Assembly (NCBI RefSeq): GCF_001194135.2
Contig: NC_068995.1
Span: 45,612,335 to 45,670,039, forward strand
DNA from: Octopus bimaculoides
Lineage: Eukaryota
Length of the DNA stretch: 57,705 nucleotides
Direction: 5' to 3'
Made by a program: the position numbers and the translations under genes. The notes beneath the pieces are model-generated. The model was not told where the DNA came from, searched no databases, and was given only the letters and a program-made list of their open reading frames with translations. Below are positions 8,386-50,660 of this stretch, in pieces; within the stretch, counting starts at the first letter, position 1; each line of letters begins with the position of its first letter.

Positions 8386-8502
8386 TTAATTATAAGGAGC
8401 TTCATAGGACTGTTGGAACAGTCAGTACCTCTTTAACACATCATTGCCCTCTTTAAAATGGAAATCATCTGTTTTGAGTTTGACCCTTTTTATCCCTTAA
8501 AA

Positions 8503-9601
8503 CAGGGGTTTTCAAACCGTGGTCCGCGGACCACAGGGAGTCCGTGGACAGCAAATACTTTTTATGGGCAATTTGATTTTATATATGTCCTTTAATCGAA
8601 ATCTTTTAATTGACAATAAACCTATTTTGTTAAATACTGTTAAATAAATAAAATGTAAAAATATATGTTATTTCAAGCAAATATTTATGTATAAATTTCA
8701 TAAGCGTTTATAAGGGGGTCCCTAAGGTAAAGNNNNNNNNNNNNNNNNNNNNNNNNNNNNNNNNNNNNNNNNNNNNNNNNNNNNNNNNNNNNNNNNNNNN
8801 NNNNNNNNNNNNNNNNNNNNNNNNNNNNNNNNNNNNNNNNNNNNNNNNNNNNNNNNNNNNNNNNNNNNNNNNNNNNNNNNNNNNNNNNNNNNNNNNNNNN
8901 NNNNNNNNNNNNNNNNNNNNNNNNNNNNNNNNNNNNNNNNNNNNNNNNNNNNNNNNNNNNNNNNNNNNNNNNNNNNNNNNNNNNNNNNNNNNNNNNNNNN
9001 NNNNNNNNNNNNNNNNNNNNNNNNNNNNNNNNNNNNNNNNNNNNNNNNNNNNNNNNNNNNNNNNNNNNNNNNNNNNNNNNNNNNNNNNNNNNNNNNNNNN
9101 NNNNNNNNNNNNNNNNNTGTATGTCTATGTGTGGATGCGCATGTGCACTAAGGTAAAGCCTGAACTATAAAGGGGTCCACAAGCCAAAAAGTTTGAAAAC
9201 CCCTGGCCCAAGGTACCACACAGCAGGACTGAAACCATGTGGTTGGAAACCAAACTTCTTAACCACACAGCCACGCCCGGGTCTCCTTCAGGCACTCACA
9301 TACATGTGTGGGGTCTGTATGTCTATGTGTGGATGCGCATGTGCACTAAGGTAAAGCCTGAACTATAAAGGGGTCCACAAGTCAAAAAGTTTGAAAGCCC
9401 CTGGCCCAAGGTACCACACAGCAGGACTGAAACCATGTGGTTGGAAACCAAACTTCTTAACCACACAGCCACGCCCGGGTCTCCTTCAGGCACTCACATA
9501 CATGTGTGGGGTCTGTATGTCTATGTTTGGATGTGCATGTGCACTAAGGTAAAGCCTGAACTATAAAGGGGTCCACAAGCCAAAAAGTTTGAAAACCCCT
9601 G
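8503..9601. mobile_element. hAT (Charlie-like) non-autonomous element with internal tandem array
   Basis: 15-bp TIR CAGGGGTTTTCAAAC/GTTTGAAAACCCCTG; perfect 8-bp TSD CCTTAAAA (8495-8502, 9602-9609); unexpanded homolog at 49865-50154. Confidence 0.9.
9118..9601 (+). repeat. 198-bp tandem array (hAT right end + SINE head fragment)
   Basis: CTAAGGTAAAGCC recurs at 9148, 9346 and 9544 (period 198); units differ by a few substitutions. Confidence 0.9.
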
Positions 9602-10083
9602 CCTTAAAATATCACACAACACAAACAGTATCAGCAACAATGTCAGTAATGCTACGCAACAGTTTCTGTTGTTACATTAACTTCAGTAACTTGGACTTCA
9701 GGTGGTGGTGGTGGTGGTGGCTGGGGGATTTGCAGTGATGGTCATGATATTGTGTGTGTGTGAGAGAAGAGAGATGATAATTTATAGATTTGTGCATATG
9801 ATGTGTGCGAGGGGAAGGTAGTAGTTGTGGCAATAATAATAATGATGATGTGTGGGTTAATGGTGATGGCGATTATGGACGTGTTGTACAGATGTGTGTG
9901 TGTGTGTGTGCGTGTGTCTATTGATGCTTTGTAGATATATGGTTGGAGTAGGGGTAAATGCTTTGTTGGGGTTGGGTGGAAAGGAAGGAAGGAAGGAAGG
10001 AAAGAAAGAAGGAGCAGTGTGAATGTATAGTGTATTTTATATTTAGTATGTGGTGTGTCATACTTAGTGGTTGCATGGTTGTA

Positions 10084-10583: not shown

Positions 10584-11856
10584 NNNNNNNNNNNNNNNNN
10601 NNNNNNNNNNNNNNNNNNNNNNNNNNNNNNNNNNNNNNNNNNNNNNNNNNNNNNNNNNNNNNNNNNNNNNNNNNNNNNNNNNNNNNNNNNNNNNNNNNNN
10701 NNNNNNNNNNNNNNNNNNNNNNNNNNNNNNNNNNNNNNNNNNNNNNNNNNNNNNNNNNNNNNNNNNNNNNNNNNNNNNNNNNNNNNNNNNNNNNNNNNNN
10801 NNNNNNNNNNNNNNNNNNNNNNNNNNNNNNNNNNNNNNNNGTGGTGGTGGTGGTGGTGGTGGTGGTGGTGGTGGTGATGATGATGGCTGGTTGTAACAGT
10901 GAAGTTGTTGTTCTTCTTCTTGATGGTGTTGGTGATGGTAATGATGATGATGACTGGTAGTGCCAGTGATGCTGCTGCTGATGGTGGTGACAGTGATGAC
11001 TGGTATTAACAATGATGTTGTTATTGATGGTGGTGGTGGTGGTGGTGGTAATGGTAGTGCCAGTGATAGTAAAGAGCATATTTGTGGTAGCGGGTGGTGC
11101 AGTTACATTGTTGTCACCACCACCACCACCACTGTTACTACCACCAATACTGCGGTCCCTTGATATGTTCTCCATAAATGCAATCTTTTGTGACCCAGTT
11201 CCAATTAATTCCCATTTGGGGTTAACTTCACTCACTTAGCTAATTAAAATCCCCCGAGAAACAATAGCACCATCAGAACCCTCCATTTTTTCCTCCTAAC
11301 CCATAATTCTCAAAATTTCTCAGCTGGTTTTAAAATAAACATGTCATTATTACTGATGATGATGTGGCAAGCATCCATGGTATAGTGAAAGGTTAGTTAG
11401 TTTAGAAATTGACTAGCTTCACTTCCCTGTTTGAATGATATGAACTTGCAGTGCTGACAATGTTGGTAAAGGATGACAGCCACAAATTCACATAAGTTTG
11501 TAACCCTTACCTGTTTTTTTTTTTTTCGAGTAAGGGATCGTTTATATCACATACCTAGGAAGGCATGAAGTGAGTGGACAAGTTGTTGACAGGGAAAGTG
11601 AGAACACCACCACTGCTCATAACGACCATCATAAAATGTAAACAAACACACAGGTGCACATATGCACACATGCGCACCCACACATAGACATACAGACCCC
11701 ACACATGTATGTGAGTGCCTGAGGGAGACCTGGGCGTGGCTGTGTGGTTAAGAAGTTTGGTTTCCAACCACATGTTAGTCTTGAATGAATGAACTGGTTG
11801 TCAGAAGCCTTCCATCCTTGACCTCCCTCTATTGTAGTGTCTAGAATCTCATTATC

Positions 11857-12084
11857 TTATTTCTTTATTGCCCGCAAGGGGCTAAGCATAGAGGGGACAA
11901 ACAAGGACAAATAAAGGAATTAAGTCGATTACATCGACCCAGTGCATAACTGGTACTTAATTTATCGACCCCGAAAGGATGAAATGCAAAGTCGACCTCG
12001 GCAGAATTTGAACTCAGAACGTAAAGACAGACAAAATACCGATAAGCATTTCGCCCGGCGTGCTACCGTTTCTGCCAGCTCACC
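11857..12084 (-). mobile_element. SINE family B, full length
   Basis: Closely matches 32597-32827; tail GCCCCTTGCGGGCAATAAAGAAATAA on the minus strand. Confidence 0.9.
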
Positions 12085-12299: not shown

Positions 12300-13877
12300 T
12301 TAAGGTGTTTGGAAAGTAATTGGTTTTTCACAACTATGAAATATGAATCAACCACTCACATCAGAGCCACGGTTGAATGGCAGAAAACTGTCTAGAAATA
12401 GTACATCATCTCTTCTCCCCCAGCAGTGTGTCGTTCATAGTTATTTTAGTAATTAACCTCATGGGATAAGAACTTTATGAAACAACATATTTGCCATTGC
12501 TTACCGTATGAGCTTCAAAAGAAAAGTACTGCTACAGAAGCAATGGAAAGCATTTGTGAAGTGTATCCGGATGCAATGAAAGCTCATGCATGTCAGTTGT
12601 GCTTTAAAGATGGTGATTGTGATATATCCGACAAGCCTCGCTCTGGAAGACAACCCACTCTGAATGACAACCTTTTGAATGAAACTATTGTATCAAGATC
12701 CATGTCAAAGCACCAGAGATTTAATGCAAAAATTTAATGTGTCATGTTCAACTATCCATTAATACCTCATACAAATTGGAAAAGACATGCAAAGAGAGAA
12801 TTTGGATTCCACATAAGCTTACGCTTGAGAAGCGATCACAATGTTCCACCAGCTTTAGCAGTCTTCTAACCAAGAATGGCAACCTGTCATTTCTGCAGTG
12901 CATTCTTACAGGTGATGGAAAATGGGTTTTGCACAACAATAGAAAACAAAAAGACAATCATTATTACGTTAAATTCAAATTACGATGAACGTAAACAAGC
13001 AAACGAAGTTTGCTTTTAGAAGCATTGAGATGTCTTAGAAAGTTACAGAAGTGATTTTAAATTCTCAAACGCAGGATAATGCTAATAAAAATATAGCCTG
13101 GACAGGATAGGCTATCCCTATTTTGCAGAAAAAAGTGTAGGTGGTCAGCTATGAGACTCGAATTCACACCTCCGTGATTACATGTCGCGGTGCTCTAGAC
13201 CGATTAGGCTAAACTACTCACCACAAATTCTTCTGCAAATTTAAGATGTATAGAAATCTCGCTTTATGAGACGCTATGAGAGGTCAGTGTCAATAACAAA
13301 ACCAGAACTCTATCCACAAAACTCTTTCTGTGTTTGGTGGAACATGAAAGATATCGTCCATTATGAACTGTTGGAACATGAAAGGACCATCAGTGCAGAT
13401 GTTTATTGCCAAGATGTCTATTGATTGTATGAATGAGAAATTATGCCGAAAGTGGCCAGCTTTTGGTAAAAAGAAAAGCTATTATTCTCCAACATGACAT
13501 GGCCATACACTTCAAAACAAACCCCCCCCCCCAAAAAAAATAAGATCATTAGGATGGGAAGTTCTTCCACATCCTTCATACTCACCCGACTTAGCACCTG
13601 CAGACTTCCATCTGTTCCAATCACTAGAACATTTTATAAGAGGCAAAACCTTCAGAAAGAGAGAGGAAGTTAAAAACAGTCTTTCAGACATTTTTTTTCA
13701 GGAAAAGAAATAGGTTTTTTTGAAAGTGGCATAAAAAAAAGTTACTTTCTCGTTAGATTGTAGTAATTAGAAACATTAGTGATTACATACTTGATTAAAA
13801 CTATTCAAATAAGCGTAGTTTACAATTGTTTTTTTTATCCTTTCTGGTAAAGCACAATTACTTTCCGAACACCCTAA
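12300..13877 (+). mobile_element. Decayed full-length mariner (DD34D) transposon with internal insertion
   Basis: Imperfect TIRs TTAAGGTGTTTGGAAAGTAATTG / CAATTACTTTCCGAACACCCTAA-TA; disrupted transposase with HTH (KQHICHCL..DKPRSGR), WIPHKL, TGDGKW, CVWWNMKDIVHYELL, LQHDMA and GWEVLPHPSYSPDLAPADFHLF. Confidence 0.95.
13142..13217 (-). pseudogene. Degenerate tRNA-like sequence (UGU at the apparent anticodon position) inside the mariner
   Basis: Cloverleaf-like fold: acceptor GT(C)AGTT/AGCTGAC, A-box TAGCCTAATCGG, anticodon stem CCGCG/CACGG, T-loop ATTCGAG; T6 run 8 nt downstream (13129-13134). Confidence 0.65.
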
Positions 13878-48344: not shown

Positions 48345-48800
48345 TAATAATAATAATCCTTTCTACTAAAGGCACAAGGCCTGATATTTTGGGAGAGGAG
48401 ACTAGTCGATTACATCGACCCCAGTGTTTCACTGGTATTTAATTTATTCACCCTGAAAGGATGAAAGGCAAAGCCGACCTCAGCAGAATTTGAACTCAGA
48501 ACGTAGTGGTAGACAAAATACTGCTAAGCATTTCGCCCCGAGTGCTAATGATTCTGCCAGCTCGTCACCTTCTTAATAAAAATAATAATGATAATAATAA
48601 TAATAACAATGATTTCATGCTTTTGCCACAAGGGCAGTTGATTACATTGATCCCAGTGCGTAACTGGTACTTGTTTAATTGACCCTGAAAGGATTAAAGG
48701 CAAAGGTGACCTCGACAGTATTTGAAATCAGAACGTAACGGCAGATAAAATACTTCTAAGCATTTTGCCCTGTGTGCTAACAATTCTGCCACCTCACCAG
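48345..48800 (-). mobile_element. Two tandem family B SINEs
   Basis: Two GAAAGGAT.AAAGGCAAAG..GACCTC / TTTGAA.TCAGAACGTA units. Confidence 0.85.
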
Positions 48801-49106
48801 TTTCTTAATTAATAATAATAATAACAATAATAACTACACAATCCAACAAGGGATTGTCATTATGGTTATTTATCTTGCTAGAAATAGTAACCAAATCTCT
48901 CTCAAATCTTACCATACAGCTTATGAACAAAAACGAAGGACACATTGGACAACATAGTCCTAGGTAATCTATATTTGAACAGAAGATGGCTGGAACACTT
49001 GATTGCAGGTTCGATGGATCAGGACTGACCAAGCGCAAAATAACAGCCCTCACCACACCATGTCCAAACCTCCGGACAGTAAAACTTATACCAAACCATT
49101 ACTCAC

Positions 49107-49319: not shown

Positions 49320-49812
49320 CTATATTATTATATTATAATGATATGATAATATTCTTATAATTATTATTATATTATAATATGATAATATTATTATAATTAT
49401 TATTATATTATAATGATATGATAATATTATTATAATTATTATTATATTATAATGATATGATAATATTATTATAATTATTATTATATTATAATGATATGAT
49501 AATATTATTATAATTATTATTATATTATAATATGATAATATTATTATAATTATTATTATATTATAATGATATGATAATATTATTATAATTATTATTATAT
49601 TATAATGATAGAATNNNNNNNNNNNNNNNNNNNNNNNNNNNNNNNNNNNNNNNNCTTATAATTATTATTATATTATAATATGATAATATTATTATAATTA
49701 TTATTATATTATAATGATATGATAATATTATTATAATTATTATTATATTATAATGATAGAATAATATTATTATAATTATTATTATATTATAATGATATGA
49801 TAATATTATTAT
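49320..49812. repeat. AT-rich ~39-bp minisatellite (34-bp variants), gap-interrupted
   Basis: Unit ATAATATTATTATAATTATTATTATATTATAATGATATG repeated >10 times in PFDN1 intron 2. Confidence 0.9.
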
Positions 49813-49864
49813 AAAAGGTAGTGAGCTGGTAGATTCATTAGCATGTCAGATGAATTGTTTAGAG

Positions 49865-50154
49865 CAGGGGTTTTCAAACTGTGGTCTGCGAACCACAGGG
49901 AGTCCGCAAGGACAAAACAGGGGGTCCGTGGACAGCAAATACTTTTTATGGGCAATTTGATTTTATATATGTTTTTTAATCGAAATATTTTAATTGACAA
50001 TAAACCTATTTGTTAAATAAATAAATGTAAAAATACATGTTATTTTAAGCAAATATTTATGTATAAATTTCATAAGCGTTTATAAGGGGGTCGTCCCTAA
50101 GGTAAAGCCTGAAATATAAGGGGGTCCGCAAGTCAAAAAGTTTGAAAACCCCTG
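49865..50154. mobile_element. hAT MITE (290 bp), same family as 8503-9601
   Basis: Both 15-bp TIRs present; flanks GTTTAGAG / CCATACAG do not match. Confidence 0.9.
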
Positions 50155-50660
50155 CCATACAGGCATGGGCTGGCCAGTTCAATAGGAGCAGATGAGCTGA
50201 AGGGCTGAGTTGAACTCCAGTACTGGCTTTGGCATGGTTTCTAGGCTGGACACTCTTCCAAATGCCAACCACTTTATGGAGTGTACACTGTGTGCTTTTT
50301 TTTCATGTCACAAGTGATATCAGCAACTAACTTACAAGACAACCCCACTTGAATGAGTGAACGTGTGTATGTGTGTGTGTGGGGGGGGGGTAGTATACAA
50401 GGGGGTGGTTTTATACCAGGTGTCAAAATAGGATAAGCACAGGTATTTTGCTGTGGAGGAGATACATGGTTACCCTGCATCATATAAGGCTGGGTGGAAA
50501 TAGCTGGAAAGAGAGATAAAGAGGGTGGTGATGAAGTGTCAGGGGATACCTTTAAGGTAGAAGAGGGAGGATAATGTAAGAGAGAATAGAGACAGATGAT
50601 TGGAATGGTGGGTGGGTGGGTAAGTTAACAAGAATGTGAAAGGAGTCAGGATAAACTTAC

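What the first reader, a model, noticed from the sequence alone, without database searches (positions are those of the whole stretch)
8495..9609. hAT element containing a 198-bp tandem array of its own right end plus captured DNA
The outer boundaries are a normal hAT insertion (15-bp TIRs, CCTTAAAA TSD). Inside, the last 58 bp of the element, including the right TIR, recur every 198 bp. Each internal copy is followed by 140 bp of foreign DNA (an inverted SINE A head plus unique flank) starting GCCCAAGG. The units carry private substitutions, which argues against assembly stutter. The 386-N gap could hold about two more units. This looks like a satellite forming from a transposon end, possibly by one-ended or local transposition followed by replication slippage or rolling amplification. 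It gives the element several usable right ends.
Basis: partly seen in the sequence, partly recalled or inferred. Interest (0 to 1): 0.7.

Follow-up and report, generated by a model that had tools for sequence, protein, structure and literature searches.

The report
Transposon carrying repeats of its end
A small non-coding hAT transposon carries, in tandem, at least three (probably four) copies of its own right end, each joined to 140 bases picked up from a site 2 kb away; this is a small natural example of how DNA transposons capture and multiply host DNA, but it is one locus in a gap-ridden draft assembly.

Summary
Bases 8503-9601 are bounded by perfect 15-nt inverted ends and a perfect 8-nt target duplication (CCTTAAAA). 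Inside, a 198-nt unit repeats: the element's last 58 nt (R58) plus 140 nt of foreign DNA (F140).

Gap test: the left contig stops 11 nt into R58 and the right contig starts 30 nt before an F140 end. The two sides are in register only if the gap is 157 + 198n nt. The value 355 is closest to the 385 N written, which gives 4 units and 5 right ends.

New result: F140 is 97% identical to window 11667-11774 on the opposite strand, 2.1 kb away. That homology stops within 2 nt of the F140|R58 junction, so this site is the source of the captured DNA.

Best reading: a MITE sat at that site, a duplication spanning its right end and flank arose there, and the composite hopped locally as a macrotransposon. 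The mechanism is inferred, the unit count depends on a draft assembly, and genome-wide frequency could not be tested.

Maize Ac composite insertions and macrotransposons, and MITE-borne tandem repeats, are close precedents. I rate it a new variant of a known kind, of moderate interest.

The parts
8495..8502 (+). Left copy of the 8-nt target site duplication, CCTTAAAA
   Evidence: Identical to 9602-9609. Fits the Buster-type hAT target pattern nnnTAnnn (PMC3517528).
8503..8517 (+). Left terminal inverted repeat, CAGGGGTTTTCAAAC
   Evidence: Perfect 15-nt complement of 9587-9601.
8503..8732 (+). Left arm and body of the MITE (230 nt). It includes the 16-nt palindrome GTGGTCCGCGGACCAC at 8519-8534. 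The last 11 nt (8722-8732) are the start of the first R58.
   Evidence: 82% identical to the simple copy at 49865-50107. The terminal ~45 nt are shared with 24 eukaryote-like metagenome contigs.
8733..9117 (.). Assembly gap (385 N). To keep register it must hold 47 nt of R58, 110 nt of F140, and 0, 1 or 2 further 198-nt units.
9118..9147 (+). Last 30 nt of an F140 copy whose start lies in the gap
   Evidence: Identical to 9316-9345.
9148..9205 (+). R58 copy 1: the right 58 nt of the MITE, with the inverted end at 9191-9205
9206..9345 (+). F140 copy 1: captured DNA. Inverted SINE head at 9206-9279, non-SINE flank at 9280-9345.
   Evidence: 97.2% identical over 108 nt to 11774..11667 on the minus strand.
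9346..9403 (+). R58 copy 2, with private changes 9382 C>T and 9397 A>G (the latter inside the inverted end, 9389-9403)
9404..9543 (+). F140 copy 2, with private changes 9527 G>T and 9534 C>T
9544..9601 (+). R58 copy 3: the outermost right end, with the inverted end at 9587-9601. This is the end used for the insertion seen here.
9602..9609 (+). Right copy of the target site duplication, CCTTAAAA
11667..11783 (-). Progenitor (source) locus of the captured DNA: the same SINE head variant plus the same 66-nt flank. No MITE is present. The SINE head is broken off 18-30 nt short of the GCCCAAGG junction.
49865..50154 (+). Simple 290-nt copy of the same MITE family, used as the reference for the canonical structure

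Best explanation
This is a real composite, non-autonomous hAT element of the Buster/Charlie-like type. It consists of a canonical ~277-nt MITE followed by repeats of [140 nt of captured host DNA + the MITE's last 58 nt].

Most likely history:
1. A SINE lay at the locus now at about 11.7 kb.
2. A MITE copy inserted into that SINE, with its right end abutting GCCCAAGG.
3. A 198-nt segment spanning the right end and its flank was duplicated in tandem. The new junction is ...GCATGTGCA|CTAAGG..., made by end joining or template switching. Unequal exchange or slippage between the 58-nt repeats then added units.
4. A transposase supplied in trans cut at the left end and at an outer right end. The whole composite moved as a miniature macrotransposon 2.1 kb away, in the opposite orientation, and created the CCTTAAAA duplication.
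5. The old site was repaired with loss of the SINE sequence next to the former junction.

Shown: the structure, both junction types, the target duplication, and the source locus.
Inferred: the order of steps 3 and 4, the enzyme and repair routes, and excision from the 11.7-kb site.
For: - Perfect 15-nt inverted ends and a perfect 8-nt duplication bound the whole composite. The site fits nnnTAnnn, as do 12 of 14 distinct flanks of related elements (PMC3517528).
- Related elements in unrelated contigs have 8-nt duplications and the same left/right end asymmetry. Each R58 therefore holds the conserved right-end features: inverted end, T5 run and a GGACCCC motif.
- The R58|GCCCAAGG junction falls exactly at the last base of the inverted end and, on the other side, at an internal position of the SINE consensus. 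That is the signature of a transposase-made junction.
- F140 matches 11774..11667 on the minus strand at 97.2% and 95.4% over 108 nt. Both share a private 6-nt deletion and a 66-nt non-SINE flank. Independent SINE copies in the window are only 72-93% alike.
- Homology to the 11.7-kb locus ends within 2 nt of the F140|R58 junction, after which that locus continues with unrelated sequence. This is expected if it is the parental flank, not a fragment of the array.
- No MITE remains at 11.7 kb, and the SINE head is broken 18-30 nt from where the MITE end would have been. This fits excision with a flanking deletion.
- Experimental precedent in another hAT: Ac macrotransposons and composite insertions that carry several copies of captured host DNA excise and reinsert with 8-bp duplications (PMC4270019, PMC9910405). 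That hAT elements tend to move to linked sites is established knowledge for Ac; I did not check it in a paper here.
Against: - This is one locus in a draft scaffold. The array abuts a 385-N gap, and continuity with the left arm is inferred from register and the duplication, not read.
- All four unit differences lie in one unit, so the unit number and the placement of variants could be products of gap filling.
- GCCCAAGG does not fit the family's TA-centred target preference, so the inner junction may not come from a standard insertion.
- No excision footprint is visible at 11.7 kb. The deletion there could be unrelated.
- No autonomous partner element was found.
- The genome could not be searched, so a multi-copy composite family is not excluded.
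Confidence: 0.45

Rival explanations
1. A maize-type composite insertion. Transposase paired a left end and a right end from two nearby MITE copies or from sister chromatids (alternative transposition). The ends inserted at CCTTAAAA ahead of a replication fork. The MITE and 140 nt of its flank were re-replicated, possibly by rolling circle. The broken ends were joined without homology, giving the F140|R58 junction. Extra units came from repeated rounds or from later unequal exchange.
For: The primary structure [whole MITE + its right flank] x [58 nt of a right end], bounded by an 8-nt duplication, is exactly what the composite-insertion model predicts. Internal junctions there carry 0-9 nt of microhomology (PMC4270019). 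The junction here has at most 1-3 nt. Rolling-circle re-replication has been proposed for a maize allele with three tandem duplications separated by Ds. The source lies only 2.1 kb away.
Against: It needs two ends in a suitable arrangement at the source, and no MITE is there now. No linked duplication or deletion is visible in the window. Re-replicated tracts in maize are kilobases long, not 58-140 nt.
Confidence: 0.2
2. Capture in place by faulty gap repair. A simple MITE at CCTTAAAA was cut or excised. The break was repaired by copying from another MITE copy then present at 11.7 kb. Synthesis ran through that copy's right end into its flank and then switched back into the MITE 58 nt from its end. 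Later slippage added units.
For: It gives the same primary structure and keeps the original duplication. The switch point has little or no homology. A nearby template is available. Template-switching repair is a classical explanation for rearranged Ds elements; this is from my own knowledge and was not checked in a paper here.
Against: It requires a MITE at 11.7 kb that was later lost by a separate event. It needs more steps than moving a ready-made composite.
Confidence: 0.1
3. Largely an assembly artefact. The true locus is a simple MITE or a one-unit composite, and gap filling looped through the 58-nt repeat or stacked the two haplotypes in tandem.
For: The window has 18 N gaps in 57.7 kb. 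The array sits at a contig edge. Three of the four partial or full copies are identical, and all variation is in one unit. Gaps in this scaffold sit in repeats.
Against: The F140|R58 junction cannot come from any single-copy locus in the window, and it is present three times. Four differences in 198 nt (2%) are many for two alleles of a recent insertion. One of them (T at 9382) is the state seen in the independent copy at 50133. The right contig begins inside an F140, so at least one more unit must lie to its left.
Confidence: 0.15
4. The composite is the ordinary consensus of an abundant repeat family or dispersed satellite, and nothing specific happened at this locus.
For: MITE families that carry internal tandem repeats are common in molluscs, frogs, fish and flies (PMC9659126, PMC12368964, PMC7492417). 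The genome itself could not be searched.
Against: The only other family member in the window is a simple 290-nt copy. F140 has a single other match, 2.1 kb away, which lacks any R58 and continues into unrelated DNA exactly at the junction. That match is 97% identical, against 82% between the two MITE copies. No match to either junction was found in any collection that could be scanned, though those collections hardly contain this genome.
Confidence: 0.07

Closest known systems
Maize Ac/Ds composite insertions and Ac macrotransposons (PMC4270019, PMC9910405)
   Same: Both belong to the hAT superfamily. Both have one left and one right terminus bounding TE sequence plus host DNA that used to flank a TE nearby. 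Both have an 8-bp target duplication and internal junctions with little or no homology. Both can hold several copies of the captured segment and extra internal termini, and both move locally.
   Different: The maize structures are 5-28 kb, arose in tracked pedigrees from defined Ac/fAc pairs, and were shown to excise and reinsert. Here the element is about 1 kb. The repeat unit is 198 nt and regular. The host is an invertebrate-like genome, no partner transposase is known, and nothing is shown experimentally.
MITEs and foldback elements that carry tandem repeats: Tetris TIR-220, Xmix/Xstir, miDNA4, pearl/CvA, and the cod gadMor-hAT-1784 MITE (PMC9659126, PMC12368964)
   Same: Each is a non-autonomous DNA transposon with an internal tandem array that can be carried around and could seed a satellite. 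In Tetris, Xstir and the cod hAT MITE the repeats derive from the terminal region.
   Different: In those families the monomers are TE sequence only, and the repeat-bearing form is the family consensus in many copies. Here each monomer joins a complete terminus to 140 nt of host DNA with an identifiable source, and only one copy is known.
Tandem arrays of hobo and P elements formed by double insertion and unequal exchange (PMC5932611)
   Same: hobo is a hAT element. Intact termini recur inside a tandem array at a euchromatic site, and the array expands from a first duplicate.
   Different: There whole elements are repeated head to tail and separated only by the 8-nt target duplication. Here only 58 nt of the element recur, separated by 140 nt of captured DNA, and the array lies inside one element's boundaries.

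Membership tests
hAT superfamily, non-autonomous element (MITE) | 8-bp target site duplication | tested here: met
   CCTTAAAA at 8495-8502 and 9602-9609. Related elements in metagenome contigs also have 8-nt duplications. Definition taken from PMC3517528.
hAT superfamily, non-autonomous element (MITE) | Short terminal inverted repeats (5-27 bp) | tested here: met
   15-nt perfect inverted ends. They start CAGGG, which fits the hAT YARNG start; that rule is from my own knowledge.
hAT superfamily, non-autonomous element (MITE) | Ends shared with an autonomous element that encodes a hAT transposase | not testable with these tools
   No hAT transposase reading frame is in the window. The ORFs of 130 aa or more in the 24 related contigs were listed but not scanned against protein families.
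hAT superfamily, Buster family | Target site consensus nnnTAnnn | tested here: met
   The outer duplication CCTTAAAA has TA at positions 4-5, as do 12 of 14 distinct flanks of relatives (PMC3517528). The inner GCCCAAGG does not fit.
Ac-type macrotransposon / composite insertion | One left and one right terminus with a target duplication, enclosing TE sequence plus DNA that flanked a TE at a nearby site | tested here: met
   F140 derives from the locus at 11667-11783.
Ac-type macrotransposon / composite insertion | Origin from two interacting termini, with reciprocal or linked rearrangements, or demonstrated excision and reinsertion | not testable with these tools
   This needs pedigrees, population data or an excision assay. 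No linked duplication was seen in the window.
Satellite DNA | Long arrays of many monomers, usually at several loci | tested here: not met
   Only 2.4 units are read, and 3-4 are implied, at one locus in the window. The genome-wide state is unknown.
Tandem-repeat-bearing MITE family (pearl / miDNA4 / Tetris kind) | The repeat-bearing structure is the family consensus, present in many dispersed copies | not testable with these tools
   The only other copy in the window is simple. Junction searches in the reachable collections were empty.

The most novel reading that the evidence does not exclude
Every 198-nt monomer carries a working right terminus. The element would then be an 'accordion' transposon: transposase can pair the left end with any of several right ends, so each hop can carry a different number of monomers. 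One-ended or nested events could add more. This would be a direct, still active route by which a DNA transposon both creates and scatters a proto-satellite made partly of host DNA (here a SINE promoter region) in an animal genome.
Probability: 0.12. Interest if true: 0.65.

Novelty: new variant of a known kind. Interest (0 to 1): 0.4.

Why it matters
If long reads confirm it, the locus captures an early stage that is usually erased. Three things are still visible side by side within 3 kb: the source of the captured DNA, the recombinant junction, and the transposed product. It links two bodies of work that are seldom connected: hAT macrotransposons and composite insertions, known mainly from maize genetics, and the origin of tandem repeats from MITEs in animals. 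It also shows how host sequence can be duplicated and moved by a 277-nt non-coding element. In practical terms, it is a cautionary case for repeat annotation, because such an element would be split into MITE, SINE and 'unknown' pieces. It is also a site where length polymorphism is likely.

Tried and rejected
1. Independent copies through proteins. A 56-aa reading frame spans both junctions. It found no relatives. Two other window ORFs are not on record.
2. Exact-pattern scans for the two junctions in metagenome, prokaryotic-genome and viral collections: nothing. These collections are poor proxies for the host genome.
3. Scan for the MITE's left 22 nt. It gave 24 eukaryote-like metagenome contigs that share only the terminal ~45 nt. 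They helped with end and target features, not with the composite.
4. Search for an autonomous hAT. No candidate reading frame was found in the window. The long ORFs in those contigs were listed but not scanned against protein families.
5. Rfam and tRNA scans of the window: nothing.
6. Remnants of SINE or MITE beyond the break at 11775-11860: local alignments score no better than shuffles.
7. A paralogous empty site for the joined flanks: none in the window.
8. Inversion model, with a breakpoint at the right end. Rejected because the target duplication is direct and perfect, and no inverted copy of it lies near 11.7 kb.
9. Idea that F140's distal 66 nt are a 5' extension of a SINE subfamily. 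No other SINE copy in the window shares it.
10. Literature search for the end sequence: no paper prints it.
11. Organism. The SINE consensus looks like the abundant octopus SINE, but only from my memory. I did not verify this and did not spend a large protein search on it.

Full report
**What is in the sequence**

The window is a draft scaffold: 57,705 nt, 37.7% G+C, and 18 runs of N. It has no Rfam or tRNA hits and no evident host gene. It holds many copies of a tRNA-type SINE.

At 8503-8517 lies CAGGGGTTTTCAAAC, and its exact reverse complement is at 9587-9601. CCTTAAAA lies directly outside both ends, at 8495-8502 and 9602-9609. That 8-mer occurs five times on both strands of the window, so a chance match at both boundaries is very unlikely.

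TRF finds a 198-nt period at 9118-9601, with 2.4 copies and 97% matches. It is the only long-period, high-identity array in the window.

**Anatomy of the unit**

I phased the unit on the element's structure, as R58 + F140.

- R58 is CTAAGGTAAAG...GTTTGAAAACCCCTG. It is the genuine right end of the family. In the simple copy at 49865-50154, the same 58 nt (93% identical) follow directly after the sequence at which the left contig stops. The canonical element here would therefore be 219 + 58 = 277 nt.
- F140 starts with GCCCAAGG. Its first ~74 nt align to the inverted head of the window's SINE family, starting at an internal SINE position. They carry a private 6-nt deletion and several private substitutions. 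The remaining 66 nt are not SINE.
- Copies lie as follows: the tail of one F140 at 9118-9147; R58 at 9148-9205; F140 at 9206-9345; R58 at 9346-9403; F140 at 9404-9543; R58 at 9544-9601.

There are only four differences among the units, and all are in the middle unit: 9382 C>T, 9397 A>G within the inverted end, 9527 G>T and 9534 C>T. The T at 9382 is also the state of the independent copy near 50133.

**The gap**

The left contig ends with the first 11 nt of R58. The right contig begins with the last 30 nt of an F140. The two sides cannot be joined by overlap. They are in register only if the true gap is 157 + 198n nt.

The written gap is 385 N, and the nearest in-register value is 355. That gives a composite of 277 + 4 x 198 = 1069 nt with five right ends. 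The minimum (157) gives three F140 copies and four right ends.

Continuity is thus consistent with one array but was not read. The matching target duplication on the two contigs is the best evidence that they flank a single insertion.

**Where the captured DNA came from (new)**

F140 nt 31-138 match window 11774..11667 on the minus strand, at 97.2% (unit 1) and 95.4% (unit 2). The match includes the same private SINE variant and the same 66-nt non-SINE flank. Independent SINE copies in the window are only 72-93% alike. The two sequences are therefore paralogues from one SINE insertion, 2.1 kb apart and inverted.

Homology ends within 2 nt of the F140|R58 junction. The array continues with CTAAGG (MITE sequence), while the 11.7-kb locus continues with TGCATATGTGCACC. 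That is what a parental flank should look like. It is not what a stray fragment of the array should look like.

On the other side, the 11.7-kb locus loses homology 18-30 nt short of GCCCAAGG. The next 86 nt resemble neither the SINE nor the MITE. No MITE end lies near it.

**What kind of element it is**

- The 8-nt duplication and short inverted ends are the defining hAT features (PMC3517528).
- A scan for the left 22 nt found 24 eukaryote-like metagenome contigs that share the terminal ~45 nt.
- Several of these are short elements with 8-nt duplications.
- Twelve of 14 distinct flanks have TA at positions 4-5. This is the Buster-family target pattern nnnTAnnn (PMC3517528).
- CCTTAAAA fits that pattern. 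GCCCAAGG does not.
- Those relatives show the same asymmetry of ends as the window element. The left type is inverted end + TGTGGTCCGCGGACC. The right type is inverted end + TTTTT ... GACCCC.
- Each R58 therefore keeps the conserved right-end features.
- No transposase gene could be linked to these ends. The window shows no hAT transposase frame; the long ORFs in the related contigs were listed but not scanned against protein families.

**How it most likely arose**

The R58|GCCCAAGG junction falls exactly at the last base of the inverted end, so a transposase made it. I infer that a MITE once sat in the SINE at the 11.7-kb locus.

The F140|R58 junction joins unrelated sequences with at most 1-3 nt of shared bases. 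It is therefore a recombinant junction from end joining, slippage or template switching.

Once two R58 copies flank an F140, unequal exchange or slippage can add units.

The perfect direct duplication around the whole structure shows that a left end and an outer right end were inserted together at CCTTAAAA.

The simplest history has five steps:
1. A MITE inserted at the 11.7-kb locus.
2. A 198-nt tandem duplication arose across its right boundary.
3. The array expanded.
4. The composite hopped 2.1 kb in inverted orientation, as a miniature macrotransposon.
5. The donor site was repaired with a deletion.

Confidence in this path is 0.45.

Two other histories give the same primary structure. One is a maize-type composite insertion through alternative transposition and re-replication (PMC4270019), at 0.2. 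The other is in-place gap repair that copied from a MITE then present at 11.7 kb, at 0.1. They differ in what they predict for the donor locus in other individuals or species, which I could not examine.

I rejected an inversion model because the duplication is direct and perfect.

**Artefact and 'ordinary family' rivals**

The array touches a gap in a scaffold whose gaps mostly sit in repeats, and all variation is in one unit. The unit count and the placement of variants may therefore owe something to gap filling.

Two points argue for a real array. The F140|R58 junction cannot be derived from any single-copy sequence in the window. The right contig also starts inside an F140, which forces at least one more unit to its left. 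I give 0.15 to a mostly artefactual array.

A widespread composite family (0.07) is disfavoured by three observations: the simple copy at 49865, the R58-less parental locus, and the 97% versus 82% identities. It could not be tested genome-wide. Junction searches by protein and by DNA in every reachable collection were empty, but those collections hardly contain this genome.

**Comparison with what is known**

- Tandem repeats carried by MITEs, some derived from the terminal region, are known. Examples are Tetris, Xmix/Xstir, miDNA4, pearl and a cod hAT MITE (PMC9659126; PMC12368964).
- hobo, a hAT element, forms tandem arrays from double insertions (PMC5932611).
- Ac composite insertions and macrotransposons carry several copies of captured host DNA between Ac termini. 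They excise and reinsert with 8-bp duplications (PMC4270019; PMC9910405).

The present element works like the last group, at one hundredth of the scale. It differs from the MITE-satellite cases because each monomer is a complete terminus fused to host DNA with a traceable origin. I rate it a new variant of a known kind.

**Verdict**

Interest is 0.4. It is a neat, informative locus if long reads confirm it, but the principles are already established in maize and in the literature on transposon-derived satellites. The evidence is one locus next to an assembly gap.

Noticed in passing
window 11667-11860: At the source locus the SINE head is cut off 18-30 nt from where the MITE end would have been, and it joins 86 nt of DNA with no similarity to the SINE or the MITE. 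Divergence from the array rises just before the break: 1 mismatch and 3 gap positions in 19 nt, against 3 mismatches in 108 nt. This may be a repair scar from excision.
   Followed up: partly
window 49857-50162: The simple MITE copy has no matching target duplication (GTTTAGAG on the left, CCATACAG on the right), yet both 8-mers fit nnnTAnnn. It could be a recombinant between two insertions, or simply old. It also carries a 22-nt insertion that duplicates a subterminal GGGGGTCCG-type motif.
   Followed up: no
window 8519-8534; loci L001-L024: A perfect 16-nt palindrome, GTGGTCCGCGGACCAC, lies right after the left inverted end. It and the end are conserved in 24 eukaryote-like contigs from JGI metagenomes. 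This suggests a widespread hAT (Buster-type) lineage with asymmetric ends. From memory only, those sample ids belong to marine worm symbiosis projects.
   Followed up: partly
window 12477-13700 (+): Decayed Mos1/mariner-type transposase remnant. The ORF at 12477-12737 matches the Pfam family HTH_48 (E = 1.5e-10). Frameshifted pieces follow it.
   Followed up: no
window 48404-48833 and 11857-12084: A second SINE-like family (not the one in the array) occurs as a head-to-tail dimer with a 232-nt period at 81% identity. Another copy of it lies next to the source locus of the captured DNA.
   Followed up: no
window 49323-49814: An AT-rich minisatellite (39/75-nt period, about 13 copies, 77% matches), interrupted by a 40-N gap, ends 50 nt upstream of the simple MITE copy.
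   Followed up: no
window 9206-9279 and 9404-9477 (minus strand): Each monomer holds a SINE head (the polymerase III promoter region) that points into the inverted end, and that end contains TTTT and TTTTT runs on that strand. Each unit could in principle give a short polymerase III transcript. This is pure speculation.
   Followed up: no
whole window: There are 18 N gaps in 57.7 kb, most of them at microsatellites or inside SINEs. Any repeat structure in this scaffold needs checking against reads.
   Followed up: partly
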